Shown one piece after another: positions 6,001 through 41,683 of a stretch of DNA of 64,000 nucleotides (positions are counted from its first letter, which is position 1; the number at the start of each line of letters is the position of its first letter). Below the pieces are notes generated by a model. That model saw only the letters and a program-made list of their open reading frames with translations, did not search any database and was not told the origin of the DNA. Both the position numbers and the translations under genes were made by a program. This DNA is from Ranitomeya imitator (Eukaryota), in the NCBI RefSeq assembly GCF_032444005.1, contig NC_091285.1:11594001-11658000 (forward strand), given 5' to 3'.

Positions 6001-6978
6001 CCTCCATAGGAGGATGAAAGTCTACAGCTCCTCTCCTAGTTTCCCCCTGGTCTTCATGGCTTTGGGTTAGACATCTAGAAACATTGTCTAGCCTTGTGCA
6101 TGAGCCGCTGACTTTCATTGCATTCTTTAACTTGTGTTCACCATTTTAGGATGCCACCTCCCATCTGTGCCATAAGCGAGGATCTGTCGCTCCGGTCAGC
6201 CGCTCCACCTCAAGAAGTACGTACTCCGAGGAGCCTAATCGAAGTCACTGCTCAACTTTGCTGAGGCTTTGCTTGGCCCTGTATGTCGCTGGTAGACATC
6301 TTGCCGAGCTAGCCCTGAGTCAGTTTATTGGATGACTTGGGAAGCCATATCAAATTTGAGATGAAGATAGGAGCTGGCTATGCCTTCTTATAATCTATGG
6401 TTTTTCCAACAGGTTGGAGTGATTCATCCCAGCTTGGGAACCCAGAAATGGAAGAAAGCTTCAACAGTACAGACTCCGGACAGGGGGACTCGCGTAGCAT
6501 GACGCCAGTAGATGTGTCCATGAGCAGCGGCCAAGCTGCCACCATACTGCCGGTCCATGTCTATCCTCTTCCTCAGCAGATGAGGGTAGCTTTCTCCTCA
6601 GCCAGAACATCTAATTTTGCTCCTGGGACACTTGACCAACCAATCGTGTTTGACCTCTTGCTCAACAATCTGGGCGATACCTTCGACTTCCAGGTCGGGC
6701 GTTTCATGTGTCCAGTTAACGGCACCTACGTGTTTATATTCCACATGTTAAAACTTGCTGTGAATGTCCCGCTGTACGTCAACTTGATGAAGAATGAGGA
6801 GGTAATGGTGTCTGCCTACGCCAACGATGGAGCTCCTGACCACGAGACTGCCAGCAACCACGCTGTCCTGCAACTTTACCAGGGTGACCAGATCTGGCTG
6901 CGGCTGCACCGAGGAGCCATTTATGGCAGCAGCTGGAAGTACTCCACTTTCTCTGGGTATTTACTGTATCAGGATTGA
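18..6978 (+). CDS. CAPRIN2: Caprin-2, 3' portion (gene starts left of the window), multi-exon
   Basis: Exons read with AG acceptors and GT/GC donors: 18-256 (LLKAQKK...KELDGLSKF), 398-480, 657-~811 (end uncertain; 739 also possible), 1353-1592, 2071-2127, 2305-2412, 2626-2757 (LPKDPELRKQKLEDL...YNFMQ), 2867-2930 (DSMLDFE), 4082-4143, 4281-~4382, 4459-4569, 4876-5025, 5258-5435 (VFKVSPPLPARKE...STASTQT), 5640-5822, 5891-5991, 6150-6216, 6413-6978. Peptides match my recollection of vertebrate CAPRIN2 in order and phase. Central low-complexity exons are less certain. Confidence 0.95.
2998..4003. mobile_element. Possible solo LTR in a CAPRIN2 intron
   Basis: ~1 kb insert in an otherwise short-intron gene. 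Begins TGTAATGACC and ends GGTACTACA (TG...CA, short imperfect inverted ends). No clear target-site duplication. Confidence 0.3.
6413..6978 (+). CDS. CAPRIN2: CAPRIN2 terminal coding exon, C1q globular domain
   Basis: ...PLPQQMRVAFSSARTSNFAPGTLDQPIVFDLLLNNLG...HRGAIYGSSWKYSTFSGYLLYQD* is near-identical to the recalled CAPRIN2 C1q domain. Confidence 0.98.
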
Positions 6979-7475
6979 CTAGATGTTAATTTGGACCCAC
7001 TGGTGGAATGGTGGGAAGGACCAGAGACTTAAAGTTGGACCTCATGACCTGGATGCAGATCAAAGATGTTGTGACTTTGCACGGTTGATGCACAATATAA
7101 AGTTGTGATGGGTCGGTGGCATAAATAAATGATTGCAATCCAGTTGTGTGGTCTTGTGTTCCTGGTGGTGACCATGTTGCCCTATTCCATTCATAATAGA
7201 AGGGGTATATAAGGGGGAACTTTGCTGTGTAGACTGGGACAGAATCTGGAAGGGATTAAAAAAAATGAATGATTGCTATGTAGACCTATCTAGGGCTCAA
7301 TGTACAGGATAGTAACACGATGTGCCGAGGAGGGTATTATGTCCCACTCCTTGGCCATGGACCATCCTTAACGCAAAAGGTGAAGTTGGACACTTTTTTT
7401 TGTTTAACTTCTCCTTCTGTACATACGTGTATTGTAATTAATGGAAACTGCTTCAACATGGCTGCCCCACTTGTG

Positions 7476-7609
7476 TCATAGGTTTAAAGTATGTGAACGA
7501 AAATAAACAAGTTCAGGATGATCCCAATCACATGAATATCTCATTGTGGAGGTGATGAACGTCGGGTTAGGAGTTTGGGGTTTCCTTTGCTGCCTTTCTT
7601 TTATGATAC
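7476..7609 (-). CDS. TIM-like gene cytoplasmic-tail exon (antisense to CAPRIN2 3' UTR)
   Basis: Acceptor tttttgttttcccacag, phase 1; reads (C)IIKERQQRKPQTPNPTFITSTMRYSCDWDHPELVYFRSHTLNL*, with a basic juxtamembrane cluster and two Tyr. Confidence 0.6.
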
Positions 7610-10600
7610 CTGTGGGAAAACAAAAATCTGATTTTAGAACTGAGAATCAGGTCTCTTCCTCTCGTTCACTTTGCTAAGAGCACTCCCCCACCCCCAGGGA
7701 TCTTATCTAAAGGTCCAGTAGCTTTTGTGTGCAGGTGATGTCATTACTCAAGTTTCTCGCCTGTGATGCTCTTTACTTCTGGCCGTACTTTAACCTCCAT
7801 GATTATAATAATGGTTGTCAATCTGTTACTAAAATCCATCAAATCTCACTCTGAGCAAAGTTATTAAGCTTAGTCTAAAATGTTTTATTAACTAAAACAA
7901 TAAAAATATCAAACCCTTTTGGCACTTACATCTGTAGATGAGAAGTGGCACAAAGGCCAAGGAGCAGATAATGGTGACTCTTATAAAGGTGATGAAGCTT
8001 CTCTCAGTCACAATCTGCAATAAAAGCATTGAAAAAAAAATATTTGGGGAGCTCCCTGTATACAGAGATACATGATAAGATCCTGTCTGCAGTCACCACT
8101 AGGGGGAGCTCCCTGTATACAGAGATACATGATAAGATCCTGTCTGCAGCCACCACTAGGGGAGCTCCCTGTATACAGAGATACATGATGAGATCCTGTC
8201 TGCAGCCACCACTAGGGGGAGCTCCCTGTATACAGAGATACATGATAAGATCCTGTCTGCAGCCACCACTAGGGGGAGCTCCCTGTATACAGAGATACAT
8301 GATAAGATCCTGTCTACAGCCACCACTAGGGGGAGCTCCCTGTATACAGAGATACATGATAAGTTCCTGTCTGCAGCCACCACTAGGGGAGCTCCCTTTA
8401 TGCAGAGATACATGATAACATCCTGTCTGCAGCCACCACTAGGGGGAGCTCCCTGTATACAGAGATACATAAGTTCCTGTCTGCAGCCACCACTAGGGGG
8501 AGCTCCCTGTATACAGAGATACATGATAAGATCCTGTCTGCAGTCACCACTAGGGGGAGCTCCCTGTATACAGAGATACATGATAAGATCCTGTCTGCAG
8601 ACACCACTAGGGGAGCTCCCTCTATACAGAGATACAGGATAAGTTCCTGTCTGCAGCCACCACTAGTGGGAGCTCCCTGTATACAGAGATACATGATAAG
8701 ATCCTGTCTGCAGCCACCACTAGGGGAGCTCCCTGTATACAGAGATACATGATGAGATCCTGTCTGCAGCCACCACTAGGAGGAGCTCCCTGTATACAGA
8801 GATACATGATAAGATCCTGTCTGCAGTCACCACTAGGGGGAGCTCCCTGTATACAGAGATACATGATGAGATCCTGTCTGCAGCTACCACTAGGGGGAGC
8901 TCCCTGTATACAGAGATACATGATGAGATCCTGTCTGCAGCCACCACTAGGGGGAGCTCCCTGTATACAGAGATACATGATAAGATCCTGTCTGCAGCCA
9001 CCACTAGGGGGAGCTCCCTGTATACAGAGATACATGATAAGATCCTGTCTGCAGTCACCACTAGGGGGAGCTCCCTGTATACAGAGATACATGATAAGAT
9101 CCTGTCTGCAGCCACCACTAGGGGGAGCTCCCTGTATACAGAGATACATGATAAGATCCTGTCTGCAGTCACCACTAGGGGGAGCTCCCTGTATACAGAG
9201 ATACATGATAAGATCCTGTCTGCAGTCACCACTAGGGGGAGCTCCCTGTATACAGAGATACATAAGATCCTGTCTGCAGCCACCACTAGGGGGAGCTCCC
9301 TGTATACAGAGATACATGATAAGATCCTGTCTGCAGCCACCACTAGGGGGAGCTCCCTGTATACAGAGATACATGATAAGATCCTGTCTGCAGCCACCAC
9401 TAGGGGGAGCTCCCTGTATACAGAGATACATGATAAGATTCTGTCTGCAGCCACCACTAGGGGGAGCTCCCTGTATACAGAGATACATGATAAGATCCTG
9501 TCTGCAGCCACCACTAGGGGGAGCTCCCTGTATACAGAGATACATGATAAGATCCTGTCTGCAGCCACCACTAGGGGGAGCTCCCTGTATACAGAGATAC
9601 ATGATAAGATCCTGTCTGCAGTCACCACTAGGGGGAGCTCCCTGTATACAGAGATACATGATAAGATCCTGTCTGCAGCCACCACTAGGGGGAGCTCCCT
9701 GTATACAGAGATACATGATAAAATCCTGTCTGCAGCCACCACTAGGGGGAGCTCCCTGTATACAGAGATACATGATAAAATCCTGTCTGCAGTCACCACT
9801 AGGGGGAGCTCCCTGTATACAGAGATACATGATAAGATCCTGTCTGCAGCCACCACTAGGGGGAGCTCCCTGTATACAGAGATACATGATAAGATCCTGT
9901 CTACAGCCACCACTAGGGGCAGCTCCCTGTATACAGAGATACATGATAAGATCCTGTCTGCAGCCACCACTAGGGGGAGCTCCCTGTATACAGAGAATAC
10001 ATTTAACTCTGTAACACAACAGTATAGGCTAAACTTCCACTAGTGGTGGCTGCTGGCAGAAATTTACTACATAGTACATTTACTACAGAGTATTTGAAGC
10101 TCATGAGTTAGAAAAATAATGTCCTGGCATTAACCAGCACAGAATTGTGGATCGAATAAAATAAACAAAATGTCTGTTCGCTTTTTTTTTTTTTTCTCAG
10201 AAGAGCACTTACTGGAAACACCTTGCTTGTCATTACAGCTGTTTCACAGGGTGTTGTGGTCTTCTCCTCTGTAGGAGGTGTAGGTTCCTATGGAAGGAGA
10301 ACAGAGAACTTGCTGGATTCCCCTTTCGCCAAACTGAGTCTTGTTTACACGTTACCTGTTATGTCCTCTCTGTATGGCCCTGTCGGGTCTCCTCACTCAC
10401 TCTGTATGATGCTGTCGGGTCTCCTCACTATTTCTGTATTGTATGGCCCTGTCGGGTCTCTTCACTCACTCTATATGGCCCTGTCGGATCTCCTTACTCT
10501 GTATGATGCTGTTGTTTCGCCTCACTCATTCTGTATGGCCCTGTCGGGTCTCCTCACTCACTCCGTATGGCCCTGTCGGGTCTCCTCACTCACTCCGTAT

Positions 10601-13600
10601 GGCCCTGTCGGGTCTCCTCACTCACTCCGTATGGCCCTGTCGGGTCTCCTCACTCATTCTGTATGGCCCTGTCGGGTCTCCTCACTCATTCTGTATGGCC
10701 CTGTCGGGTCTCCTCACTCACTCCGTATGGCCCTGTCGGGTCTCCTCACTCACTCCGTATGGCCCTGTCGGGTCTCCTCACTCACTCCGTATGGCCCTGT
10801 CGGGTCTCCTCACTCATTCTGTATGGCCCTGTCGGGTCTCCTCACTCACTCCGTATGGCCCTGTCGGGTCTCCTCACTCACTCCGTATGGCCCTGTCGGG
10901 TCTCCTCACTCACTCCGTATGGCCCTGTCGGGTCTCCTCACTCACTCCGTATGGCCCTGTCGGGTCACCTCACTTTTTGTATGGCCTTGTCGGATCTCCT
11001 TACTCTGTATGGCCCTTTCGGGTCTCCTCACCTGGTTCTCTTATGCGAATACTATGGCTATTTACTATATGGACATATTATTTAGACCCTATATGATGAT
11101 ACTATTAGACAATAGCAATAATGACAGGGTAATGTCTCATCCGATGTTTCGCTACGTAATCACAGGACCTACAGGAATCAATTGACTTGCACTAATTACA
11201 CAGGTCTGCAAGAGTAAAATTGTTAAAGTAAGATGTGTTGTTTTTTTTATAGACTTTTGATCACTTAACTCAGTAAAAATATCGATTAAAATTCCATCAC
11301 ATACCGTTTTTTTTTTTTTTTTCACAAACCCTGACTCCATTGGTTTTTTTCTTACACTGAACTTTGACCCCTTCTTGTGACTTTTGGTGTCATTAAGATT
11401 GGTTAGAAATTAATGGATACTGTGCTGTGATTGGCTGCTGTGGGCAGAGATCTTTTTAACAGTGTGGTGGTGTCCATAGCATCCAATCGGAGAATATCTT
11501 AAGTTTACCTCAGCAGTGTAAGAAATGAAAGCTGTGATTGGTTGTTATGGGCAGAAAAGACTGTTTTGTTTTATTAGTCCACAGTTCATAAGTGTGATGT
11601 CCAGAGCAACCAATCAGAGCACAGCTTTCACTTTACCTCAGCAGTCTAAGAACTGAAAGCTGCACCGTGATTGGTTGCTATGGGGAGCAAAGGCAGATTT
11701 AATTTTATTCATAAGAGTGTGGCGGCGCTGCTTACCACGATTCCGTTCAGTATTTAGTGGTTGTGGTGGATTAATCAAAATGGCTACAAGGGGCTGTCGT
11801 TAATCATCCCAACAACTTTTCCTACATTTGCAGTTGTTTTGTAGTGAAGAAACATGATGGGTTTCGTTAGAAACGTACATTATGGGGTACTGTGGTGCAA
11901 AACTAGGTGATCAGGACAAGTCGTCGGCACTACATGTGTTTCTGAATGTGTAGACGAACTACAACAGTGGTCTAAAGCAGGGGTCCCCAACTCCAGTCCT
12001 CAAGGCCCACCAACATGTCATGTTTTCAGGATTTCCTTAGTCTTGCCCAGGTAATAATTGCATCACCTGTGCAATGCAAAGGAAATCCTGAAAACATGAC
12101 CTGTTGGTGGGCCTTGAGGACTGGAGTTGGGGACCCCTGGTCTAAAGAGAAGGAAGCTTTTGTTTTGGCGTGCCGATGATCCGGAGGGAAGCGGGCACTC
12201 ATAGTGATTGCTGCTACTTTTAGAAGTGGAAGGATTCACACTGAAAAATAAGAAGGAAATTATATACCCGGACCTCTCATCAGCGAGTCGCCCGGTGCCT
12301 CACGGTCCAGGAATACCTGTCACTTCACCTTCGGAGAAACTTGAAGGTTCACGCGATTCAGAACATGAAGAGCAGGATTCTGACCAAGACTTTCATGCTA
12401 GTCCAACGAGCCTCAGATTTTTTATTTTTTTTTACAGCTGTAATTGAATTAGTCTGGGACTTGGACTTTCCTTAATATTCTGTTGAACTTTTAGGCTCTA
12501 GACCAGAGGTCCCCAATGTATCTGACCTTGAGAGCCACATTCATCTCTGAGAGAGGGTCGCGAGCCACATCCAGCCTTGAGAGAGGGTCGCAAGCCACAT
12601 TCAGTTCCCAACCCCCTCACAATAGTGGTAACCAAAGCCCCCATTATAGACATAATGGTAACCAAATCTTTTCCACAAAAATCACTCCAAAGCAGTATAC
12701 TTAGACCCAGGGGTTCCCATAATACCCCCCATTCAATATTCTCCTATAAAGCACTCCCAAGACACTGCCACATCCAGATTCAAACACCTCCTCTGACAGG
12801 TGGTATCATCTTGTCTCCAGCGTACTATACTTAAATTATCTCAAAACACCTAAGGGTACCGTCACACTATACGATTTACCTACGATCACGACCAGCGATA
12901 TGACCTGGCCGTGATCGTAGGTAAATCGTAGTGTTGTCGCTGGGGAGCTGTCACACAGACAGCTCTCCAGCGACCAACGATGCCAAGGTCCCTGGGTAAC
13001 CAGGGTAAACATCGGGTAACTAAGCGCAGGGCCGCGCTTAGTTACCCGATGTTTACCCTGGTTACAAGCGTTAAACTAAAAAAAAAAAAAAACAGCACAT
13101 ACTTACATTCTGGTGTCCGTCAGGTCCCTTGCAGTCTGCTTCCCGCACTCAGTGACTGCCGGCCGTAAAGTGAAAGTGAAAGCACAGCCGCTGTGCTCTG
13201 CTTTCACTTTACGGCCGGCAGTCACAGTGCGGGAAGCAGACGGAAAGGGACCTGACGGACACCGGAATGTAAGTATGTGCTGTTTGGTTTTTTTTAGTTT
13301 AACGCTTGTAACCAGGGTAAACATCGGGTAACTAAGCGCGGCCCTGCGCTTAGTTACCCGATGTTTACCCTGGTTACAAGCGAACGCATCGCTGGATCGC
13401 ATCGCTAGATCGCTAGATCGGTGTCACACACACCGATCTAGCGATGACAGCGGGAGATCCAGCGATGAAAGAAAGTTCTAAACGATCTGCTACGACGTAC
13501 GATTCTCAGCAGGATCCCTGATCGCTGCTGCGTGTCAGACACAGCGATATCGTAACGATATCGCTGGAACGTCACGAATCGTACCGTCGTAGCGATTGAA

Positions 13601-16600
13601 ATGTTATAGTGTGACGGTACCCTAAGACCAGTAGATGTGCATCCAGATCTGCTCTTCTGTGGAGGGCTGCTCACAAAATTCACAGTTTTCAGATATGCTC
13701 TTCATACCTGTTTGCTAGACCTGGAGCTAATGCACCCACATGGCAGACAGCCTCGAGCCACAATTCATGGGCCTGCGAGCCACATGTGGCTCCCGAGGTA
13801 CAGGTTTCCCCTGCTCTAGATTAAAGAAAAAGAACCTATTTTTCATGGTCCAGAAGAAGAGAATAGGAATTCCTTCCATACTTTTCTCAAGATGGTGCTT
13901 TAGTGTATAGCAGTGATGTTCCTGGGCTGATGGAAAATTTTTACATTGAGTACAATGTGGCCAAGTACTTAATCCGAAAAAATGTCTGAAAGCTGCTACT
14001 GCACAATAGCAGTAAGTGTGCGTCAGTGCCTGCATCGCATTCTGTGCACTCGGTGGAAGGCTATGAGACCGTAGACTTTATTCTCGAGAAACTTAACTAC
14101 AAGAATCAAGGATGGTCAATATAAAAATTCTCTCTTTGCTCTGTCGGCAGCAAGAAGAATACACAAAGTACCCAAGCATATGGTGTGAATGGAACAGCCG
14201 GGATAGGACTCCTCACTGGAGCCAAAAAAAGTTGGCCAACGAGAACATCTTTGCAACCTGGACTCGAGAACATAGCTGCAGAACGTTTAGTTGATCCTAC
14301 TAAAGTTTTTCTGCCACCACTTCACATTAAGCTTGGAATGAACAAGCATTTTGTAAAAGTTCTAACGAATGAAGGAGAGACTTTTAGGTACCTGTGTACC
14401 AAATTTAAGGAACTGTCCGAAGCAAAATTGAAGGAAGGCATTTTTGTAGGTCAGGATATACACGCAAACTCATGTGTTCGAAACAAAAAAATGAAAGCTG
14501 TTGAGAAAAAGGCAAAAGGTTTGGGATTTTTTTTAAGAAGTTGTGAAGAAATTTCTAGGTAAGAACAAAGATCCAAAATTTAGGCCATCATGGAGAACAT
14601 GCTGAAACATTTCAAAGCCTTGGGTTGTCTGATGAATTTGAAGTTAAATTTTTTACATTCCTATGTGGATGACTGTCCTGAAAACCTTGGTGCTGTTAGT
14701 GAAGAGCAAGGAGAAAGATTTCATCAAGATGTTAAGAGGATGGAACGACAATACCAAGGTGACACCGCTGCTGCCTCACCAACACCGGAGCTACTGCCTC
14801 ACCAACACCGGAGCTACCGCCTCACCAACACCGGAGCTCCTGCAACCCTCAACCTACTGTCTCCTTCCCCATAATCCTGTAGAATGTAAGCCCGCAAGGG
14901 CAGGGTCCTCGCCCCTCTGTATCAGTCTGTCATTGTTAGTTTGTTTACTGTATGTGATATTTGTAACTTGTATGTAACCCCTTCTCATGTACAGCACCAT
15001 GGAATCAATGGTGCTATATAAATAAATAATAATAATAATAATAATAAGGTAGATGGATTGTGAACATGATGGGGGACTACTGTTGGATACTAAATAGAGA
15101 AGATGCGCAGGCCTTCTGTAAGAGAAAAGGGATCAAGAGAAAAGGAAAAGGCGCAGGAAATAATTTACAACAAAGTTGTAGAATGAATGTTCAATACATT
15201 TTTATGTATAAAATATTGTGTACATTTTTGGCTACAATAAATATTTTTCTTGTTCATCTCAATTGTACATACGGTAATTTCACACTCGTTTTGTGCAAAA
15301 AACTACGTAATGGTTAAAAGCAGAAGTTTTTTTTTATATCAAGCCATAAAAAAAAACATACGAATCAGCCATTTGATTTCAAACAACTTTCATAAACCCA
15401 AATTTTGCATACCTGTGTTATTGGCAATTAATTCACTGCCACCTTGGGTTTTGAGGGGTTGTTGGTTGTAACTAGAGATGGGCGAACTTGAACAGAAAAG
15501 TTTGGGGCCTGTACCGAGCACCTACTGTTCGGGCATGGACTCCAAACACGGACTTCACCGTGAAGTCCGTGTTGCTGTTCGGGTTTGACAGCGCCGAACA
15601 CAGGGTGTGTCTCACGCTGACTTGTGCATGACAGAGCGACAAACACTGCCTCTGATCAGCGGTAAAATCATTACCACCCGACAGACAGCCATGGTTGACA
15701 CGCTAACAAATGACAGCGTGAGCCTGCAGCTGTGATCAGAGGTAAAAAGTTTACCTCTGGCCACTGGCGTCGGCTGTCTTTTATTTTCAATTAAAACCCC
15801 CCACATTTTTCCTTTTTTATTTAAAAATAACAAACACAGTTATACTCACCTAACGCACATTTCACTGAAGCCAACGTCACCTGTAAAAAAAACAAACAAA
15901 ACAAAAATAAAACCCAACCACCTCCCTCTCCTGTCCGTCGTTTTGTCCCACGCCGCAATCCATGTCTGAGGATAAACAGTTTACAACCTGGACAGTGCCA
16001 AAATGAAACCATCCAGGCTAAGAACCACTGATGAATAAGCTGCTGCGAGATAAGTCTCAGTGACCAGCGGTGACGTCATCAAGGTTACCAATGGTGACTT
16101 AGGCTGCGTTCCCAGCCAGACCCCTGAACTGCGATGACCTCGGTGAGATCACTGCGAGCACAGTGAGAAAAAGTCTTACGGTACAGCGCTATGGTCAGAG
16201 AGTTCTCCGGGAGAAATGAGACTTTTTCTCACTGTGCTTCTGGTGATCTCATTTGTTTTATTACAGGAGACGAGGGCTTCAATTAAATGGTCATTAGGTG
16301 AGTATAACTGTGTTTGTTATTTTTAAATAAAAAAAGAAAAGTGTGGTTTTTTTATTTCAAATAAAAGACTTTCTGTGTTTTTAATTGTCATACAACTATA
16401 AGATTAGTAATGGATAGGTGTCTCATAGACGCCTCTCCATTACTAAGCCATTGGCTTGATGTCACCAAACAATACAAGGGTGACGTCAACCCCACAAATA
16501 TGAAACTCACCGCAAAGAGCCAGAATTGGAGCATCTAATAGATGTGCCTCTTCTGGGCGGCTGCTGGCTCCTATTTTTAGACTGGGGAGGACAATATCCA

Positions 16601-19600
16601 TGGCCCCATACCAACCTGAGAATATCAGCCCCCAGCTGTCTGCTTTAAGGAACCCATGACATTTTTTTAAATTATGGATGGTAGCAGTATGATATTACCG
16701 CTGATCAGAGACAGTGTTTGCCGCGATGTCATGCACGTGGTAAACATTGGAAGTTCGGGCCACCAAACTTTATTTTAACTGTTCTGCTGAAGCCGCTGGA
16801 CCAGAACATCCAGGGGTCCGCCCATCTCTAGTCGCAACCACACACATTTTCTGGAAAGTTTAAGAAATAAAATACAAGAACTTAGAATTTTATATAAATG
16901 ATGCAAGAAGACAAAAGAACGAATAGGGCAGCACGGTGGCGCAGTGGTTAGCACAGCAGCGCTGGAGTCCTGGGTTCTAATCCCACCCAGGACAACATCT
17001 GCAAAGAGTTTGTATGTTCTCCCTGTGTTTGCGTGGGTTTCCTCCGGGTTCTCCGGTTTCCTCCCACATTCCAAAGACATACTGATAGGGAAATTAGATT
17101 GTGAGACCCAACGGGGACAGTGATAATAATGTGTGCGGGAAATGTTAGCGCTATATAAAAATAAAGATTATTATTATTATTATTACAGCCACAATGTCTC
17201 TCCTCACAAAGAAAGGCCGATACCTCAGTTTCTGAAGGAATCACTTTAGGGTGAGACATTTCAGGTTCTAGAGGAACAAAGACCAAAGCAACCCGAGGAC
17301 CATTCATATCATCATCTTCATGATCAGCTTCTTCTTCCACATGCTCTGGTCCCAAAATAAAATACATGTGGAAATGTTCATTACTAATTTCAATATAATT
17401 GTCAGCTATGTACAAGAATATAACTACTATAATACTGCCCCTATGTACAAGAATATAACTACTATAATACTGCCCCTATGTACAAGAATATAACTACTAT
17501 AATACTGTTCCTATATAATAGAATGTAACTACTATAATACTGCTCCTATATACAAGAATGTAACTACTATAATACTGCCCCTATGTACAAGAATATAACT
17601 ACTATAATACTGCCCCTATGTACAAGAATATAACTACTATAATACTGCTCCTATGTACAAGAATATAACTACTATAATACTGCCCCATATGTACAAGAAT
17701 ATAACTACTATAATACTGCCCCCTATGTACAAGAATATAACTACTATAATACTGCCCCTATGTACAAGAATATAACTACTATAATACTGTTCCTATATAC
17801 AAGAATATAACTACTATAATACTGCTCCTATATACAAGAATGTAACTACTATAATACTGCTCCTATATACAAGAATGTAACTACTATAATACTGCCCCTA
17901 TGTACAAGAATATAACTACCATAATACTGCCCCTATGTACAAGAATATAACTACTATAATACTGCCCCTATGTACAAGAATACAACTACTATAATACTGC
18001 CCCTATGTACAAGAATATAACTACTATAATACTGTTCCTATATACAAGAATGTAACTACTATAATACTGCCCCTATGTACAAGAATGTAACTACTATAAT
18101 ACTGCCCCTATGTACAAGAATATAACTACTATAATACTGCCCCTATGTACAAGAATATAACTACTATAATACTGCCCCTATGTACAAGAATACAACTACT
18201 ATAATACTGCTCCTATGTACAAGAATATAACTACTATAATACTGCTCCTATGTACAAGAATATAACTACTATAATACTGCCCCTATGTACAAGAATATAT
18301 CTACTATAATACTGCCCCTATGTACAAGAATATAACTACTATAATACTGTTCCTATATAATAGAATGTAACTACTATAATACTGCTCCTATATACAAGAA
18401 TGTAACTACTATAATACTGCTCCTATGTACAAGAATATAACTACTATAATACTGCTCCTATGTACAAGAATATAACTACTATAATACTGCCCCTATGTAC
18501 AAGAATATAACTACTATAATACTGTTCCTATATAATAGAATGTAACTACTATAATACTGCTCCTATATACAAGAATGTAACTACTATAATACTGCCCCTA
18601 TGTACAAGAATATAACTACTATAATACTGCCCCTATGTACAAGAATATAACTACTATAATACTGCTCCTATGTACAAGAATATAACTACTATAATACTGC
18701 CCCATATGTACAAGAATATAACTACTATAATACTGCCCCCTATGTACAAGAATATAACTACTATAATACTGCCCCTATGTACAAGAATATAACTACTATA
18801 ATACTGTTCCTATATACAAGAATATAACTACTATAATACTGCTCCTATATACAAGAATGTAACTACTATAATACTGCTCCTATATACAAGAATGTAACTA
18901 CTATAATACTGCCCCTATGTACAAGAATATAACTACCATAATACTGCCCCTATGTACAAGAATATAACTACTATAATACTGCCCCTATGTACAAGAATAC
19001 AACTACTATAATACTGCCCCTATGTACAAGAATATAACTACTATAATACTGTTCCTATATACAAGAATGTAACTACTATAATACTGCTCCTATATACAAG
19101 AATGTAACTACTATAATACTGCCCCTATGTACAAGAATATAACTACTATAATACTGCCCCTATGTACAAGAATATAACTACTATAATACTGCCCCTATGT
19201 ACAAGAATACAACTACTATAATACTGCCACAATGTACAAGAATATAACTACTATAATACTGCCCTTATGTACAAGAATATAACTACTATAATACTGCCCC
19301 TATGTACAAGAATACAACTACTATAATACTGCCCCTATGTACAAGAATACAACTACTATAATACTGCCCCTATGTACAAGAATGTAACTACTATAATACT
19401 GCCCCTATGTACAAGAATATAACTACTATAATACTGCCCCTATGTACAAGAATATAACTACTATAATACTGCCCCTATGTACAAGAATACAACTACTATA
19501 ATACTGCTCCTATGTACAAGAATATAACTACTATAATACTGCTCCTATATACAAGAATGTAACTACTATAATACTGCCCCTATGTACAAGAATACAACTA

Positions 19601-21508
19601 CTATAATACTGCTCCTATGTACAAGAATATAACTACTATAATACTGCTCCTATATACAAGAATATAACTACTATAATACTGCTCCTATGTACAAGAATAT
19701 AACTACTATAATACTGCCCCTATGTACAAGAATATAACTACTATAATACTGCCCCTATGTACAAGAATACAACTACTATAATACTGCTCCTATGTACAAG
19801 AATATAACTACTATAATACTGCTCCTATATACAAGAATGTAACTACTATAATACTGCCCCTATGTACAAGAATATAACTACTATAATACTGCTCCTATGT
19901 ACAAGAATATAACTACTATAATACTGCCCATATGTACAGGAATATAACTACTATAATACTGCTCCTATGTACAAGAATATAACTACTATAATACTGCTCC
20001 TATGTACAAGAATATAACTACTATAATACTGCCCATATGTACAGGAATATAACTACTATAATACTGCTCCTATGTACAGGAATATAACTACTATAATACT
20101 GCTCCTATGAACAAGAATATAACTACTATAATATTGCTCCTATGTACAAGAATATAACTACTATAATACTGCTCCTATGTACAAGAATATAACTACTATA
20201 ATACTGCTCCTATGTACAAGAATATAACTACTATAATACTGCCCATATGTACAGGAATATAACTACTATAATACTGCCCATATGTACAGGAATATAACTA
20301 CTATAATACTGCTCCTATGTACAAGAATATAACTACTATAATACTGCTCCTATGTACAAGAATATAACTACTATAATACTGCCCCTATGTACAGGAATAT
20401 AACTACTATAATACTGCCCCTATGTACAAGAATATAACTACTATAATACTGCTCCTATGTACAAGAATATAACTACTATAATACTGCCCCTATGTACAAG
20501 AATATAACTACTATAATACTGCCCCTATGTACAAGAATATAACTACTATAATACTGCCCATATGTACAGGAATATAACTACTATAATACTGCCCCTATGT
20601 ACAAGAATATAACTACTATAATACTGCTCCTATGTACAAGAATATAACTACTATAATACTGCCCCCTATGTACAAGAATATAACTACTATAATACTGCCC
20701 CTATGTACAAGAATATAACTACTATAATACTGCTCTTATGTACAGAATATAACTACTATAATACTGCCCATATGTACAAGAATATAACTACTATAATACT
20801 GCCCCCTATGTACAAGAATATAACTACTATAATACTGCTCTTATGTACAGAATATAACTACTATAATACTGCCCATATGTACAAGAATATAACTACTATA
20901 ATACTGCCCCCTATGTACAAGAATATAACTACTATAATACTGCTCTTATGTACAGAATATAACTACTATAATACTGCCCATATGTACAAGATATGTGAAT
21001 GATCATGTGTTTTTACCTGTATTCACATTTATGTTGCGCTTTATGTCATTGAATAGCCCGGGGATCTCCACTCGGCAGCAGTACGCCCCTGCATCCTCCT
21101 CCGTCGCCCCGATGATAGAGAGGGTCACGTCCCCCTGTTCTATATTCCCCAATATCTGGTATTTGGCGGATTTTCTCCAGGTCACTTTGTCACCATCGGT
21201 GTTGATGATCACATTATTACACCCAAACATTGGGCAGAGTCCTCGCCCCCAGCAGACGCTGTTCGTCCCCCTGTGTACCGTATACGTGCAGGGGAGCCTC
21301 ATAATACCGCCATATGTCTGTACCTTGTCTGATCCTACGAAATCTGTGGAAAAACTCCGCTATTGAATGGTTTCTGGATAAATTGGATTGGAAACATTTT
21401 TGAACTCCGTATTAGGGGAAGCATAAGGGATACAAGGCTGCATGATGCAGTCCTACCTGGGTGAAGCAGGAGGATCAGTCCAACAGTGAGGAGGTCCTGG
21501 TGCACCAT
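7476..21508 (-). CDS. TIM/HAVCR-family type I membrane receptor (IgV + acidic/Thr-Pro stalk + TM + Tyr-containing tail), 6-exon model
   Basis: Exons 21508-21457 (leader), 21343-21017 (IgV), 17345-17224, 10287-10213, 8014-7930 (TM), 7609-7476 (tail + TGA). All have AG/GT boundaries and phases 1,1,0,0,1 chain without stops. Specific TIM orthology is not assignable by eye. Confidence 0.75.
7899..7904 (+). terminator. Likely distal CAPRIN2 polyadenylation signal (AATAAA); alternatives at 7124-7129 and 7502-7507
   Basis: AATAAA hexamers downstream of the stop codon. Which one is used cannot be determined from DNA. Confidence 0.55.
7930..8014 (-). CDS. TIM-like gene transmembrane exon
   Basis: Acceptor ttttattgcag, donor GTAAGT; reads IVTERSFITFIRVTIICSLAFVPLLIYR, a hydrophobic stretch ending in YR. 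Confidence 0.7.
8046..9995. repeat. 57-bp minisatellite, ~34 copies
   Basis: Unit GGGGGAGCTCCCTGTATACAGAGATACATGATAAGATCCTGTCTGCAGCCACCACTA. An inverted CTAGTGGTGGCTGC follows at ~10040. Confidence 0.97.
10213..10287 (-). CDS. TIM-like gene mucin-like exon
   Basis: Strong acceptor ttctctgttctccttccatag and donor GTAAGT; reads EPTPPTEEKTTTPCETAVMTSKVFP; phase 0-0. Confidence 0.65.
10370..11030. repeat. 32-bp minisatellite
   Basis: Unit GTATGGCCCTGTCGGGTCTCCTCACTCACTCC, degenerate at both edges. Confidence 0.95.
11978..12139. mobile_element. 162-bp palindromic hAT MITE inside the Chapaev transposase
   Basis: CAGGGGTCCCCAACTCCAGTCCTCAAGGCCCACCAACA arms are inverted; perfect 8-bp TSD GTCTAAAG (11970-11977, 12140-12147). 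Confidence 0.92.
12504..13813. mobile_element. Non-autonomous hAT (Charlie-like) element
   Basis: Ends CAGAGGTCCCCAA...GTTTCCCCTG; 8-bp TSD CTCTAGAC/CTCTAGAT, the NTCTAGAN target typical of Charlie elements. Confidence 0.8.
12854..13622. mobile_element. PIF/Harbinger-type MITE nested in the Charlie-like element
   Basis: Perfect 18-bp TIR GGGTACCGTCACACTATA, TAA TSD on both sides, multiple internal hairpins. Confidence 0.9.
14761..15045 (+). mobile_element. L2-type LINE/SINE 3' fragment inserted in the Chapaev transposase
   Basis: TAGAATGTAAGCCCGCAAGGGCAGGG...TGTACAGCACCATGG...GGTGCTATATAAATAAAT(AAT)n tail. AAGGT is duplicated at 14756-14760 and 15046-15050, splitting YQG|RW. Confidence 0.8.
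15473..16830. mobile_element. Non-autonomous hAT element (TAGAGATG TIR)
   Basis: TAGAGATGGGCGAAC ... GTCCGCCCATCTCTA; flanks GTTGTAAC/GTCGCAAC are consistent with a decayed 8-bp TSD. Confidence 0.75.
16926..17185 (+). mobile_element. tRNA-derived V-SINE
   Basis: A-box TGGCGCAGTGG, B-box GGTTCTAATCC, V-domain-like core GTTTGTATGTTCTCCCTGTGTTTGCGTGGGTTTCCTCCGGG, L2-like tail ending (TTA)n. Confidence 0.88.
17224..17345 (-). CDS. TIM-like gene acidic stalk exon
   Basis: Acceptor ttttattttgggaccag, reads EHVEEEADHEDDDMNGPRVALVFVPLEPEMSHPKVIPSETE, donor GAG|GTATCG; phase 1 to 0. Confidence 0.6.
17408..20990 (+). repeat. 35-bp AT-rich minisatellite, ~100 copies (fills the intron after the IgV exon)
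   Basis: Unit TATGTACAAGAATATAACTACTATAATACTGCCCC. Confidence 0.98.
21017..21343 (-). CDS. TIM-family IgV domain exon
   Basis: 327-nt phase 1-1 exon: LPCTY...VCWGRGLCPMFGC...TDGDKVT...GDVTLSI...DAGAYCCRVEIPGLFND. Shows the six-Cys TIM pattern and an FG-loop (W/L)FND motif. Confidence 0.95.
21457..21508 (-). CDS. TIM-like gene exon 1, signal peptide
   Basis: ATG...MVHQDLLTVGLILLLHP followed by phase-1 donor CAG|GTAGGA, 113 nt from the IgV acceptor. Confidence 0.8.
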
Positions 21509-21765
21509 AGTCTGCGACAATATGATCAGTGCTGGGGGCCATTGTCGTATGATGCATGTTACATGACGGAAATGTGGCTGCAGTGGTTACCGGTCAGACA
21601 GCCACGATCAGAGCACAGGATGTGTCTGACTAACGCGTGGGGGGCGCACTATATGGGGCATCTATGTGACGGTTCATTTACAGGGTCCAAACCAGAGACC
21701 CCCAAACTCTGTCCAGGTCCGGCTGTGAATTCTGAGGAATGTCAGTCAAAAAGAAATTTATATAT

Positions 21766-24700
21766 ACGGCAGTTATATTCTTGAGGATAGGAGCAGTATT
21801 ATAGTAGTTATATTCTTGTACATAGGAGTATTATAGTAGTTATATTCTTGTGGATAGGAGCAGTATTATAGTAGTTATATTCTTGTACATAGGGGCAGTA
21901 TTATAGTAGTTATATTCTTGTACATAGGAGCAGTATTATAGTAGTTATATTCTTGTACATAGGGGTAGTATTATAGTAGTTATATTCTTGTGGATAGGGA
22001 CAGTATTATAGTAGTTATATTCTTGTACATAGGGGCAGTATTATAGTAGTTATATTCTTGTACATAGGAGCAGTATTATAGTAGTTATATTCTTGTACAT
22101 AGGGGCAGTATTATAGTAGTTATATTCTTGTACATAGGGGCAGTATTATAGTAGTTATATTCTTGTATATAGGGGGCAGTATTATAGTAGTTATATTCTT
22201 GTAGATAAGAGCAGTATTATAGTAGTTATATTCTTGTGGATAGGGACAGTATTATAGTAGTTATATTCTTGTACATAGGGGCAGTATTATAGTAGTTATA
22301 TTCTTGTACATAGGAGCAGTATTATAGTAGTTATATTCTTGTACATAGGGGCAGTATTATAGTAGTTATATTCTTGTACATAGGGGGCAGTATTATAGTA
22401 GTTATATTCTTGTATATAGGGGGCAGTATTATAGTAGTTATATTCTTGTAGATAAGAGCAGTATTATAGTAGTTATATTCTTGTACATAGGGGGTAGTAT
22501 TATAGTAGTTATATTCTTGTATATAGGGGGCAGTATTATAGTAGTTATATTCATGTACATAGGAGCAGTATTATAGTAGTTATATTCTTGTACATAGGGG
22601 CAGTATTATAGTAGTTATATTCTTGTACATAGGGGGTAGTATTATAGTAGTTATATTCTTGTATATAGGGGGCAGTATTATAGTAGTTATATTCATGTAC
22701 ATAGGAGCAGTATTATAGTAGTTATATTCTTGTACATAGGGGCAGTATTATAGTAGTTATATTCTTGTACATAGGGGGCAGTATTATAGTAGTTATATTC
22801 TTGTATATAGGGGGCAGTATTATAGTAGTTATATTCTTGTACATAGGGGGCAGTATTATAGTAGTTATATTCTTGTATATAGGGAGCAGTATTATAGTAG
22901 TTATATTCTTGTACATAGGGGCAGTATTATAGTAGTTATATTCTTGTACATAGGAGCAGTATTATAGTAGTTATATTCTTGTACATGGGGCAGTATTATA
23001 GTAGTTATATTCCTGTATATAGGTGCAGTATTATAGTAGTTATATTCTTGTACATAGGAGCAGTATTATAGTAGTTATATTCCTGTACATAGGGGCAGTA
23101 TTATATTAGTTATATTCTTGTACATAGGGGCATTATTATAGTAGTTATATTCTTGTACATGGGGCAGTATTATAGTAGTTATATTCTTGTACATATTGGG
23201 CAGTATTATAGTAATTATATTCTTGTACATAGGAGCAGTATTATAGTAGTTATATTCTTGTACATAGGGGGCAGTATTACAGTAGTTACATTCTTGTACA
23301 TAGGGGCAGTATTATAGTAGTTATATTCTTGTACATAGGGGCAGTATTATAGTACTTATATTCTTGTAGATAAGAGCAGTATTATAGTAGTTATATTCTT
23401 GTACATAGGGGGCAGTATTATAGTAGTTATATTCTTGTATATAGGGAGCAGTATTATAGTAGTTATATTCTTGTACATAGGGGCAGTATTATAGTAGTTA
23501 TATTCTTGTACATAGGGGCATTATTATAGTAGTTATATTCTTGTACATGGGGCAGTATTATAGTAGTTATATTCCTGTATATAGGTGCAGTATTATAGTA
23601 GTTATATTCTTGTACATAGGAGCAGTATTATAGTAATTATATTCTTGTACATAGGAGCAGTATTATAGTAGTTATATTCTTGTACATAGGGGGCAGTATT
23701 ACAGTAGTTACATTCTTGTACATAGGGGCAGTATTATAGTAGTTATATTCTTGTACATAGGGGCATTATTATAGTACTTATATTCTTGTAGATAAGAGCA
23801 GTATTATAGTAGTTATATTCTTGTACATAGGGGGCAGTATTATAGTAGTTATATTCTTGTATATAGGGGCAGTATTATAGTAGTTATATTCTTGTACATA
23901 GGGGCAGTATTATAGTAGTTATATTCTTGTATATAGGAGCAGTATTATAGTAGTTATATTCTTGCACATAGGATCAGTATTATAGTAGTTATATTCTTGT
24001 ACATAGGGGCAGTATTATAGTAGTTATATTCTTGTACATAGGAGCAGTATTATAGTAGTTATATTCTTGTACATAGGAGCAGTATTATAGTAGTTATATT
24101 CCTGTACATAGGAGCAGTATTATAGTAGTTATATTCTTGTACATAGGGTCAGTATTATAGTAGTTATATTCTTGTACATAGGAGCAGTATTATAGTAGTT
24201 ATATTCTTGTACATAGGAGCAGTATTATAGTAGTTATATTTTTGTACATAGGAGCAGTATTATAGTAGTTATGTTCTTGTACATAGGAGCAGTATTATAG
24301 TAGTTATATTCTTGTACATAGGAGCAGTATTATAGTAGTTATATTCTTGTACATAGGAGCAGTATTATAGTAGTTATAATCTTGTACATAGGAGCAGTAT
24401 TATAGTAGTTATATTCTTGTACATAGGGGTAGTATTATAGTAGTTATATTCTTGTACATAGGAGCAGTATTATAGTAGTTATATTCTTGTACATAGGGGT
24501 AGTATTATAGTAGTTATATTCTTGTACATAGGAGCAGTATTATAGTAGTTATATTCTTGTACATAGAGGCAGTATTATAGTAGTTATATTCTTGTACATA
24601 GAGGCAGTATTATAGTAGTTATATTCTTGTACATAGGGGTAGTATTATAGTAGTTATGTTCCTGTACATAGGAGCAGTATTATAGTAGTTATATTCTTGT

Positions 24701-24870
24701 ACATAGGGGCAGTATTATAGTAGTTATATTCTTGTGTATAGGAGCAGTATTATAGTAGTTATATTCTTGTACATAGGGGCAGTATTATTGTAGTTATATT
24801 ATTGTACATAGGGGCAGTATTATTGTAGTTATATTCTTGTGTATAGGAGCAGTATTATTGTAGTTATACT
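21766..24870 (-). repeat. Same 35-bp minisatellite in reverse orientation, ~90 copies
   Basis: Unit GGGGCAGTATTATAGTAGTTATATTCTTGTACATA is the reverse complement of the 17408-20990 unit. Confidence 0.98.
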
Positions 24871-27600: not shown

Positions 27601-27607
27601 TTTCTAT

Positions 27608-27803
27608 CGGTGACGTCAGTGACACACTATGGGGCGGGGCTTCCAGCCGGGCAGTGGGCGTGGCTGTGCACTGTGCTTAGGGCGCGCGTTGCGACGGTGA
27701 CGTCACTCGGGGGCGGGGCTGCGTCAGGTGACGTCGCGGCGGTTGCTGACGTGGCTCTCCTGTCCGGCGCCGGTGGTTCTGTCAGTCGGAAGTTCCCGGA
27801 GAG

Positions 27804-27810
<7 letters not shown>
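27608..27810 (+). promoter_or_regulatory. ARFGAP3 CpG-island promoter
   Basis: Full CREs TGACGTCA at 27611 and 27698, CRE-like TGACGT at 27729 and 27747, GC boxes GGGGCGGGGC at 27631 and 27710, ETS CGGAAGT at 27787, YY1-like GATGGCGG over the ATG; no TATA box. Confidence 0.8.

Positions 27811-41683
<13,873 letters not shown>

What the first reader, a model, noticed from the sequence alone, without database searches (positions are those of the whole stretch)
7476..21508. Complete TIM/HAVCR-like receptor gene hidden between CAPRIN2 and ARFGAP3
Seen: six exons scattered over 14 kb of repeats splice in frame into leader, IgV, stalk, TM and tail; the ORF track shows only fragments of it. The IgV has the TIM six-Cys pattern and GLFND. 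Known: the Asn-Asp of the (W)FND FG loop forms the metal-dependent phosphatidylserine pocket, and mammalian TIM genes cluster at one locus near ITK/MED7, not beside CAPRIN2 or ARFGAP3. Inference: a relocated, possibly lineage-specific PtdSer receptor likely to be missed or fragmented by annotation.
Basis: partly seen in the sequence, partly recalled or inferred. Interest (0 to 1): 0.8.

Follow-up and report, generated by a model that had tools for sequence, protein, structure and literature searches.

The report
Annotated frog TIM-family receptor gene
A real, expressed six-exon gene for a TIM-type (phosphatidylserine-receptor-like) immune receptor lies between CAPRIN2 and ARFGAP3 in this poison-frog genome. 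It is already in the public RefSeq annotation and sits in the same place in other frogs, so it is not hidden or new.

Summary
On the minus strand, six exons with GT-AG introns splice into a 795-nt CDS of 264 aa: 21508-21457, 21343-21017, 17345-17224, 10287-10213, 8014-7930 and 7609-7476. The IgV exon is TIM family: E 5e-33 to human TIM-4, six Cys and LFND retained, and the model lies 1.1 A from mouse TIM-1. RNA contigs show the exon 5-6 joint and the exon 4-5 junction. Other RNA runs hold words of exon 3 and of the leader-IgV stretch.

The novelty claim fails. [quoted passage not shown] That model has the same 14,033-bp span and the same ArfGap and Caprin-2 neighbours. Annotated orthologues lie tail-to-tail with caprin2 in Dendrobates tinctorius and Hyla sarda. 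One older annotation did fragment the gene.

"Relocated" could not be tested. Frog TIM-like IgVs form one clade apart from amniote TIM-1/TIMD4.

The residual interest is its build. It has a short acidic stalk instead of a mucin domain, a conserved Arg in the TM helix, and a short tail without a Tyr motif whose reading frame differs between species. That is an activating-receptor build unknown in mammalian TIMs. The same scan had noted the TM arginine on this window.

The parts
21457..21508 (-). Exon 1: ATG plus signal peptide (MVHQDLLTVGLILLLHP), ends in phase 1
   Evidence: 17/17 identical to the D. tinctorius orthologue. Donor is CAG|gtagga.
21017..21343 (-). Exon 2: TIM-type IgV domain (109 aa), with six Cys and the FG loop PGLFND
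   Evidence: Pfam V-set 6e-11. PDB phmmer 4.7e-33 to human TIM-4 and 1.4e-32 to mouse TIM-1. AlphaFold model pLDDT 83.8. The top 19 PDB fold matches are all TIM-1/-2/-3/-4. RNA runs hold up to 0.50 of the words of the 20990-21560 stretch that contains this exon.
17224..17345 (-). Exon 3: acidic stalk (41 aa, 13 D/E)
   Evidence: tblastn 86% to the D. tinctorius protein. Splice sites. RNA runs X6, X16 and X17 hold 1.00 of its words.
10213..10287 (-). Exon 4: 25-aa Thr/Pro-rich stalk, a phase 0-0 cassette that is skipped in D. tinctorius isoform X2
   Evidence: Loose ends at 8014 in RNA contigs of X1, X3 and X6 equal the reverse complement of this exon's 3' end.
7930..8014 (-). Exon 5: transmembrane helix SFITFIRVTIICSLAFVPLLI with an Arg at position 7
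   Evidence: 25/28 and 27/28 identical in D. tinctorius and R. variabilis. RNA contigs cover it.
7476..7609 (-). Exon 6: cytoplasmic tail (44 aa) and stop TGA at 7478-7476
   Evidence: RNA contigs of X1 and X6 join 7606|7927, skipping 320 nt with CT..AC on the + strand, which is GT..AG on the - strand; this is intron 5. The contigs show 0 other letters and 0 gaps. The tail is read in other frames in relatives.
17406..20991 (.). 35-bp minisatellite (102 copies) filling intron 2
   Evidence: TRF.
21771..24868 (.). The same 35-bp unit in inverted orientation (88 copies), upstream of exon 1
   Evidence: TRF. The consensus is the reverse complement of the intron-2 unit.
8046..10002 (.). 57-bp minisatellite (34.5 copies) in intron 4, the source of long spurious ORFs
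6394..6978 (+). Last coding exon of CAPRIN2 (C1q domain). Its stop is 498 nt from the TIM stop, tail-to-tail.
   Evidence: PDB Caprin-2 8.7e-83. RefSeq context.
27804..27872 (+). First coding exon of ARFGAP3, head-to-head with the TIM gene and 6.3 kb from its ATG
   Evidence: PDB ARFGAP3 3.6e-06 against ARFGAP2 1.6e-04. An ArfGap gene of 540 aa in the RefSeq context.

Best explanation

Shown:
- Six exons are spliced as predicted and encode a type I membrane protein.
- The parts are a signal peptide, a TIM IgV, a 66-aa stalk (an acidic exon plus a short Thr/Pro-rich cassette exon), one TM helix and a short tail.

Inferred from the family:
- The IgV keeps the three TIM disulfides and the hydrophobic-hydrophobic-Asn-Asp tip of the FG loop.
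- It therefore most likely binds phosphatidylserine through a Ca2+ ion held in the pocket between the CC' and FG loops, on apoptotic cells, vesicles or enveloped viruses.

Inferred from its build:
- It lacks the tyrosine motif of TIM-1/TIM-3 and of the frog 'N-I-Y' TIMs.
- The tail is read in different frames in sister species.
- An Arg in the outer third of the TM helix is conserved in all five orthologues.
- So it probably signals through an ITAM adaptor (FcR-gamma or DAP12 type) rather than through its own tail. That would make it the activating partner in a frog TIM family built as paired receptors.

The locus beside caprin2 is shared with Dendrobates and Hyla.
For: - Gene structure and identity to P0158.
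- RefSeq name and neighbours.
- Spliced RNA: the joint 7606|7927 in X1 and X6, and exon-4 sequence as loose ends at 8014 in X1, X3 and X6. Exon 3 words are at 1.00 in three RNA runs. Words of the leader-IgV stretch are in RNA runs.
- TIM IgV: PDB 4.7e-33 to TIM-4, 1.4e-32 to TIM-1 and 5e-26 to TIM-3. The six Cys, F98, N99 and D100 are invariant or nearly so in 35 sequences, while hamster TIM-2 has SFSF at that site. Fold match has TM 0.83 and rmsd 1.1 A to 2or8, and the PtdSer complexes 3bib and 3kaa are among the top hits.
- Orthologues with the same exon order: D. tinctorius X1/X2, R. variabilis and Hyla sarda. They group together at 99/89 and 94/87, and the bullfrog joins at 94/91.
- Synteny with caprin2.
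- TM Arg and tail classes. Per-exon identities (TM 25/28, tail 7/44).
- TIM-1 definition (IgV with MILIBS, mucin domain, TM, Tyr-motif tail, 5q33.2): PMC11592376.
Against: - No binding or signalling data exist for any frog TIM, and I found no paper on them.
- The tip of the FG loop is Leu-Phe, not the Trp-Phe of TIM-1/TIM-4. TIM-3 also lacks Trp there (own knowledge), and LFND is the commonest form in the frogs aligned.
- The stalk is not a mucin domain: 21 of 66 residues are S/T/P and there is no N-glycosylation sequon.
- The Arg lies near the outer end of the helix. In Hyla the hydropathy window places it just outside, so it could be a juxtamembrane residue.
- The link between a basic TM residue and loss of the Tyr tail rests on only 4 independent contrasts, so it has no statistical power.
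- The 3' end of the mRNA is unresolved.
- The tissue of expression is unknown because run labels are coded.
Confidence: 0.6

Rival explanations
1. It is a tethering-only PtdSer receptor in the manner of mammalian TIM-4. The IgV captures PtdSer-bearing targets and other receptors do the signalling. The TM Arg is a stop-transfer or juxtamembrane residue with no adaptor.
For: The IgV is as close to TIM-4 as to TIM-1. The tail has no conserved motif. In Hyla the Arg falls at the edge of the hydropathy window. TIM-1 phagocytosis does not need tail phosphorylation (PMC11592376).
Against: The stalk is 66 aa, against over 170 aa in the turtle and bird TIMD4 examined. The Arg is conserved in all five orthologues. 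Basic TM residues recur in other frog TIMs that have short tails, and never in the 13 with a Tyr tail.
Confidence: 0.3
2. It is a paired-receptor decoy whose ligand is no longer, or not only, PtdSer. For example, pathogen pressure may drive fast change in the loops around the pocket.
For: Between two dendrobatid genera the IgV is less conserved (92/109) than the leader (17/17) or the TM exon (25/28). The differences cluster in the BC and CC' loops. In Lithobates and Xenopus, pairs with a Tyr tail and a basic TM have near-identical IgVs, as in paired receptor families.
Against: The Asn-Asp pair and the six Cys are intact. No dN/dS could be computed because no orthologous DNA could be fetched.
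Confidence: 0.15
3. It is a decaying paralogue. The shifting tail frame and the shrunken stalk would then mark relaxed constraint on a gene that is on its way out.
For: The tail exon is read in different frames in R. imitator, R. variabilis and D. tinctorius, and in the older R. imitator annotation.
Against: The ORF is intact with six canonical splice sites. It is spliced in RNA in several runs. Orthologues are kept from dendrobatids to Hyla and the bullfrog, with the TM exon nearly unchanged.
Confidence: 0.05

Closest known systems
[quoted passage not shown]
   Same: Identical 264-aa product, the same 14,033-bp ATG-to-stop span, and the same ArfGap and Caprin-2 neighbours.
   Different: Nothing: it is this gene. 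The name comes from automatic annotation, and no function has been tested.
TIM-4 (TIMD4) of mammals, birds and turtles
   Same: IgV with three disulfides and the FG-loop Asn-Asp pocket. Human TIM-4 matches at E 4.7e-33 with about 50% identity. The tail has no Tyr signalling motif.
   Different: TIM-4 has a long mucin stalk and no basic residue in the TM helix, has Trp-Phe at the loop tip, and lies at 5q33 (PMC11592376). In the tree, frog genes are not one-to-one orthologues of it.
TIM-1 (HAVCR1) and TIM-3 (HAVCR2)
   Same: The same IgV fold: rmsd 1.1 A to mouse TIM-1 2or8 and 1.3 A to the TIM-3/PtdSer complex 3kaa. Type I layout.
   Different: They carry a tyrosine phosphorylation motif in the tail (PMC11592376). 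Frog paralogues ending in N-I-Y keep that motif, and this gene does not.
Activating members of paired Ig receptor families (for example CD300, which also binds PtdSer/PE; own knowledge)
   Same: A single IgV, a short stalk, a basic residue in the TM helix and a short tail without a motif. Tyr-tail relatives exist in the same genomes.
   Different: The IgV is of TIM type, not CD300 type: CMRF35/CD300 structures match only at 1e-4. Adaptor pairing is untested.

Membership tests
TIM (HAVCR/TIMD4) family | V-set Ig domain with six conserved cysteines (three disulfides) | tested here: met
   C19, C31, C42 and C90 are invariant, and C37 and C89 are kept in at least 90% of 35 aligned sequences. All six are present here and align to human TIM-4 and mouse TIM-1.
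TIM (HAVCR/TIMD4) family | [quoted passage not shown] | tested here: met
   P-G-L-F-N-D. F98, N99 and D100 are kept in at least 90% of the alignment, while hamster TIM-2 has SFSF there. This shows the sequence only; no binding was tested.
TIM (HAVCR/TIMD4) family | Three-dimensional fold of the TIM IgV | tested here: met
   The model has pLDDT 83.8. PDB ranks 1-19 are all TIM-1/-2/-3/-4 with TM 0.72-0.83. The next fold, CAR D1, is at E 1e-05.
TIM (HAVCR/TIMD4) family | Mucin-like Ser/Thr/Pro-rich stalk | tested here: inconclusive
   The stalk is 66 aa. Exon 3 is acidic (13 D/E of 41), and only the 25-aa exon 4 is Thr/Pro-rich (13 S/T/P). This is far shorter than the amniote TIM-1/TIMD4 examined, at 104-228 aa.
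TIM (HAVCR/TIMD4) family | Single TM helix and cytoplasmic tail (with a Tyr motif in TIM-1/TIM-3) | tested here: not met
   The TM helix is present (KD 2.19). The tail has no N-x-Y motif, unlike 13 frog paralogues and mouse TIM-1. TIM-4 also lacks the motif, so this does not exclude membership.
TIM (HAVCR/TIMD4) family | Ca2+-dependent binding of phosphatidylserine | not testable with these tools
   Needs recombinant IgV and liposome or apoptotic-cell assays.
TIM (HAVCR/TIMD4) family | Position in the TIM cluster near ITK/MED7 (the mammalian arrangement, not strictly defining) | tested here: not met
   The gene is flanked by CAPRIN2 and ARFGAP3, and the window holds no second TIM IgV. Where the other frog TIM genes lie relative to ITK/MED7 could not be found.
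Adaptor-coupled (activating) Ig receptors | Basic residue inside the TM helix | tested here: met
   Arg at position 7 of the 21-aa window. It is conserved in R. variabilis, D. tinctorius and the bullfrog, and lies at the helix edge in Hyla.
Adaptor-coupled (activating) Ig receptors | Short cytoplasmic tail without ITIM, ITAM or other conserved motif | tested here: met
   Tails are 6-46 aa. Only CIIK is shared, and the frames differ between species.
Adaptor-coupled (activating) Ig receptors | Physical and functional pairing with FcR-gamma, DAP12 or DAP10 | not testable with these tools
   Needs co-expression and co-precipitation.

The most novel reading that the evidence does not exclude
Frogs run their TIM family as paired receptors. 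Tyr-tail members stand beside members with a basic TM residue and a throw-away tail, sometimes with near-identical IgVs. This caprin2-linked gene, kept from dendrobatids to Hyla and probably the bullfrog, would be an ITAM-adaptor-coupled 'activating TIM' that turns PtdSer recognition into an activating signal. No such class is known among mammalian TIMs.
Probability: 0.35. Interest if true: 0.55.

Novelty: already known. Interest (0 to 1): 0.22.

Why it matters
As a gene discovery it does not matter. The model is in RefSeq for this very assembly, and orthologues are annotated at the same place in other frogs. It is a useful check that a tool-free reader can rebuild a six-exon gene across 14 kb of minisatellites to the exact base.

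The point worth carrying forward is comparative immunology. Frogs have a large TIM-like family of their own, and no paper in the held library treats it. The family includes members built like activating receptors. If those couple PtdSer sensing to ITAM adaptors, they would show a mode of dead-cell or enveloped-virus sensing that mammals handle with CD300 and TREM receptors rather than with TIMs.

Tried and rejected
- Context look-ups failed for the shorter isoforms P0013 and P0153, because only the longest product is on record.
- Contexts of other frog TIM genes showed only other V-set genes or nothing within 10 kb. These were X. laevis chr3L (P0078), Ascaphus (P0175), R. variabilis (P0060), bullfrog (P0264) and Bufo (P0269). 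So neither deeper synteny with caprin2 nor linkage to ITK/MED7 could be settled.
- tblastn of the window's Caprin-2 C1q exon and ARFGAP3 exon 1 against the fetched Xenopus and Ascaphus loci found nothing.
- No orthologous DNA could be fetched ("sample's file is too large"), so per-exon dN/dS was not done. Only protein identities are given.
- The independent-pairs test of basic TM residue against loss of the Tyr motif has only 4 contrasts and no power.
- Mammalian TIM-3 and TIM-4 full-length sequences were not retrieved by the word-based searches. The tree is therefore anchored on mammalian TIM-1/-2, sauropsid TIMD4/HAVCR1 and one Varanus HAVCR2 on a long branch.
- I did not lay reads on stretches containing the long minisatellites. 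I chose 6800-8040, so the exon 1-2, 2-3 and 3-4 joints were not seen directly.
- The claimed antisense overlap with the CAPRIN2 3' UTR is neither shown nor excluded. There was no contig coverage at 7052-7470 in four runs, and there are poly(A) signals on the + strand at 7124, 7255, 7502, 7899 and 8019.
- Pfam found nothing in the intronic ORFs at 14185-14871.
- Three literature searches found no work on amphibian TIM genes.
Full report
**What is in the sequence**

The finding spans 7476-21508, and the gene is on the minus strand. The mechanical ORF list shows only pieces. The best is a 99-aa ORF at 21003-21302 that reads as an Ig V domain. Reading the minus strand at 20900-21700 shows an ATG at 21508, a hydrophobic leader, and a donor CAG|gtagga. 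An acceptor ccacag| then opens a 327-nt exon that ends ACAG|gtaaaa. That exon hits Pfam V-set at 6e-11.

Against all PDB sequences, its best matches are:
- human TIM-4 at 4.7e-33;
- mouse TIM-1 at 1.4e-32;
- mouse TIM-4 at 6e-29;
- TIM-3 at 5e-26.

Non-TIM Ig domains appear only from 1e-05. The printed alignments put all six cysteines and the Asn-Asp of G-L-F-N-D opposite those of TIM-4 and TIM-1.

**The full gene model**

A HMMER scan of 1.84 billion representative proteins with the IgV exon gave 778 hits. One of them was 86% identical and 209 aa long (P0013). [quoted passage not shown] Its cluster mate is isoform X1 of 230 aa.

tblastn of P0013 on the window located the leader, the IgV, a stalk exon near 17346-17221 and a TM exon near 8047-7928. 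Isoform X1 adds a 21-aa Thr/Pro-rich piece that matches the window at about 10287.

[quoted passage not shown] Threading the window against it gave a unique solution with GT-AG at every intron:

| Exon | Coordinates | Length | Content |
|---|---|---|---|
| E1 | 21508-21457 | 52 nt | ATG and leader |
| E2 | 21343-21017 | 327 nt | IgV |
| E3 | 17345-17224 | 122 nt | acidic stalk |
| E4 | 10287-10213 | 75 nt | Thr/Pro stalk |
| E5 | 8014-7930 | 85 nt | TM |
| E6 | 7609-7476 | 134 nt | tail, stop at 7478-7476 |

The CDS is 795 nt, and the translation equals P0158 residue for residue.

**It is already annotated, and in the same place in other frogs**

In GCA_032444005.1 the gene for P0158 spans 14,033 bp. 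Upstream, on the other strand, lies an ArfGap-domain gene of 540 aa. A 999-aa gene with Caprin-1_dimer, Caprin-1_C and C1q domains starts 498 bp past its stop. That is the arrangement of this window.

I confirmed the flanks in the window:
- The last + strand exon before 6978 matches the solved Caprin-2 C1q domain at 8.7e-83.
- The 23-aa first exon at 27804-27872 matches ARFGAP3 (2crw) at 3.6e-06, better than ARFGAP2 at 1.6e-04.

The orthologue in D. tinctorius is followed, tail-to-tail, by a Caprin-2 gene and then an importin gene. The Hyla sarda orthologue (XP_056373750.1, 252 aa) is followed by Caprin-2 and preceded by another TIM-like gene of 215 aa.

One older annotation of R. imitator (GCA_958301615.1) did break the gene into two IgV-less fragments, CAJ0960716.1 and CAJ0960710.1.

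**Transcription and splicing**

- RNA runs hold up to half of the sampled words of the 20990-21560 stretch that carries the leader and IgV exons.
- Three RNA runs hold all sampled words of exon 3, and five more hold 0.75.
- Contigs of runs X1 and X6 join 7606 to 7927, skipping 320 nt. The ends are CT..AC on the + strand, which is GT..AG on the minus strand. With the stated 3-base ambiguity this is intron 5 (7610-7929).
- In X1, X3 and X6 the contigs run off at 8014 into TGGAAACACCTTGCTTGTCATTACAGCTGT. This is the reverse complement of the last 30 nt of exon 4.
- The loose parts are 172 and 207 letters long. That is enough to reach exon 3 and, in X3, the IgV exon if they are colinear. Only the first 30 letters are shown, so this stays an inference.
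- The contigs match the tail exon with no differences, so the window's tail frame is the transcribed one.
- The exon 1-2, 2-3 and 3-4 joints were not seen directly.
- The mRNA 3' end is unresolved. The contigs stop at 7469-7475 with fold-back joints, and the first AATAAA on the minus strand is 1149 nt past the stop.

**What the protein looks like**

An alignment of 35 IgV domains shows the following:
- C19, C31, C42 and C90 are invariant.
- C37, C89, F98, N99 and D100 are kept in at least 90% of sequences.
- Hamster TIM-2 has SFSF in place of FND.

Mouse TIM-2 is known to lack the metal site (own knowledge).

An AlphaFold model built from that alignment has mean pLDDT 83.8. Its first 19 PDB matches are all TIM IgV domains. 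They include mouse TIM-1 (rmsd 1.1 A, TM 0.83) and the PtdSer complexes of TIM-4 (3bib) and TIM-3 (3kaa). The next fold follows at 1e-05.

[quoted passage not shown] It lies at 5q33.2 with HAVCR2 and TIMD4. This frog protein meets the IgV criteria but departs downstream:
- The stalk is 66 aa. It consists of an acidic exon (13 D/E of 41) and a 25-aa Thr/Pro-rich cassette.
- There is no N-glycosylation sequon.
- The TM window SFITFIRVTIICSLAFVPLLI holds an Arg at position 7.
- The 44-aa tail has no N-x-Y motif.

Between R. imitator and D. tinctorius the per-exon identities are:

| Exon | Identity |
|---|---|
| leader | 17/17 |
| IgV | 92/109 |
| stalk 1 | 35/41 |
| stalk 2 | 18/25 |
| TM | 25/28 |
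| tail | 7/44 |

After the shared CIIK, the tail is read in different frames in D. tinctorius and R. variabilis and in the older R. imitator models.

**Family context**

A word-based search with the IgV part returned 246 proteins. Dozens are frog proteins named HAVCR1 homolog, HAVCR2 homolog, TIMD4-like or polymeric-immunoglobulin-receptor-like, the last being multi-IgV proteins.

I built a maximum-likelihood tree of 57 IgV domains on 109 columns. Many forks on so few columns are weak, but these results stand out:
- All 32 frog sequences form one clade (95/92), apart from a clade of mammalian TIM-1/-2 and sauropsid TIMD4/HAVCR1 (93/83). The name "HAVCR1 homolog" therefore does not mean one-to-one orthology.
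- The window's gene groups with R. variabilis and D. tinctorius (99/89), then with the caprin2-linked Hyla gene (94/87), then with a bullfrog "TIM-2-like" protein (94/91).
- Mammalian TIM-3 and TIM-4 were not among the rows. The only TIM-3-type anchor is a long Varanus branch.

Among 27 single-IgV frog proteins:
- 13 have an uncharged TM helix, apart from one Glu in a bullfrog protein, and a 37-49-aa tail ending in N-I/V-Y.
- 9 have Arg or Lys in the outer part of the TM helix and a short tail without that motif.

None of the amniote TIMs examined has a basic residue in that outer part of the helix. In Lithobates and Xenopus the two kinds have near-identical IgVs. This is the pattern of paired receptor families. 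The state changes at least four times on the tree, but four contrasts give no statistical power.

**Mechanism, with confidence**

- Real, expressed TIM-family gene: about 0.97.
- Ca2+-dependent PtdSer binding by the IgV: about 0.7, inferred from retained residues and fold only.
- Signalling through an ITAM adaptor via the TM Arg: about 0.35-0.4, inferred from the build and its conservation.

The main rival is a TIM-4-like tether without an adaptor. A ligand shift under pathogen pressure and slow decay are less likely.

**Relocation**

I could not test it. All context look-ups for other frog TIM genes showed only Ig neighbours or none within 10 kb. The fetched Xenopus and Ascaphus loci hold no Caprin-2 or ARFGAP3 exon. 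In each species the TIM-like genes share one chromosome-sized record. That fits one or two clusters but does not say where they are.

**Verdict**

This is an ordinary, already annotated member of a frog-expanded TIM family. Three notes of this scan cover the same window: the TM arginine (s1-295222), the inverted minisatellites (s1-294848) and the CAPRIN2 overlap (s1-295150). The activating-type build is the only part I would carry forward.

Noticed in passing
window 17406-20991 and 21771-24868: The same 35-bp minisatellite, in opposite orientations (102 and 88 copies), brackets the 780-bp island that holds the promoter region, exon 1 and the IgV exon.
   Followed up: partly
window 8046-10002 and 10368-11031: A 57-bp array (34.5 copies) and a 32-bp array (21 copies) lie in introns 4 and 3. 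The 57-bp array gives stop-free ORFs of up to 465 aa in several frames, which are artefacts of the repeat.
   Followed up: partly
window 27000-27680 and 28000-28900: Tandem repeats flank the first ARFGAP3 exon, with peptide-like periodic ORFs. GC reaches 0.68 at 28-30 kb, which looks like a CpG-island region shared by the divergent ARFGAP3 and TIM promoters.
   Followed up: no
GCA_958301615.1 contig of 236,699 bp (no DNA fetched); proteins P0159 and P0156: The older R. imitator annotation carries two fragment models with exons 3-6 and 4-6 on one contig. Their tail exons are read in other frames than the window's, and no caprin2 gene is called within 10 kb of the first. This could be a second copy, an allele or an assembly difference.
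   Followed up: partly
window 7476-7609 (exon 6) compared with P0151, P0152, P0159, P0156: After the shared CIIK, the cytoplasmic tail is read in different frames in sister species. The window's frame 1 reads KKGSKGNPKLLTRRSSPPQ, which resembles the R. variabilis tail.
   Followed up: partly
frog proteins (for example P0176/P0041 of Lithobates, P0268/P0078 of Xenopus laevis): Frog TIM-like proteins fall into a Tyr-tail class (N-I/V-Y at the C-terminus) and a class with a basic TM residue and a short tail. IgVs are near-identical within species pairs, a paired-receptor pattern.
   Followed up: partly
window 6329-7478, minus strand; 7124-8019, plus strand: There is no AATAAA or ATTAAA on the minus strand within 1149 nt of the TIM stop. 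The first, at 6329, lies beyond the CAPRIN2 last coding exon. CAPRIN2 has candidate signals at 7124, 7255, 7502, 7899 and 8019. Some antisense overlap of the two 3' ends is likely, but the four runs laid do not show it.
   Followed up: partly
Hyla sarda locus: In Hyla a second TIM-like gene (P0174, 215 aa, tail ending ENVYVKMES) lies about 4.7 kb upstream of the caprin2-linked orthologue. The window has ARFGAP3 in that position and no second IgV.
   Followed up: partly
   Followed up: no
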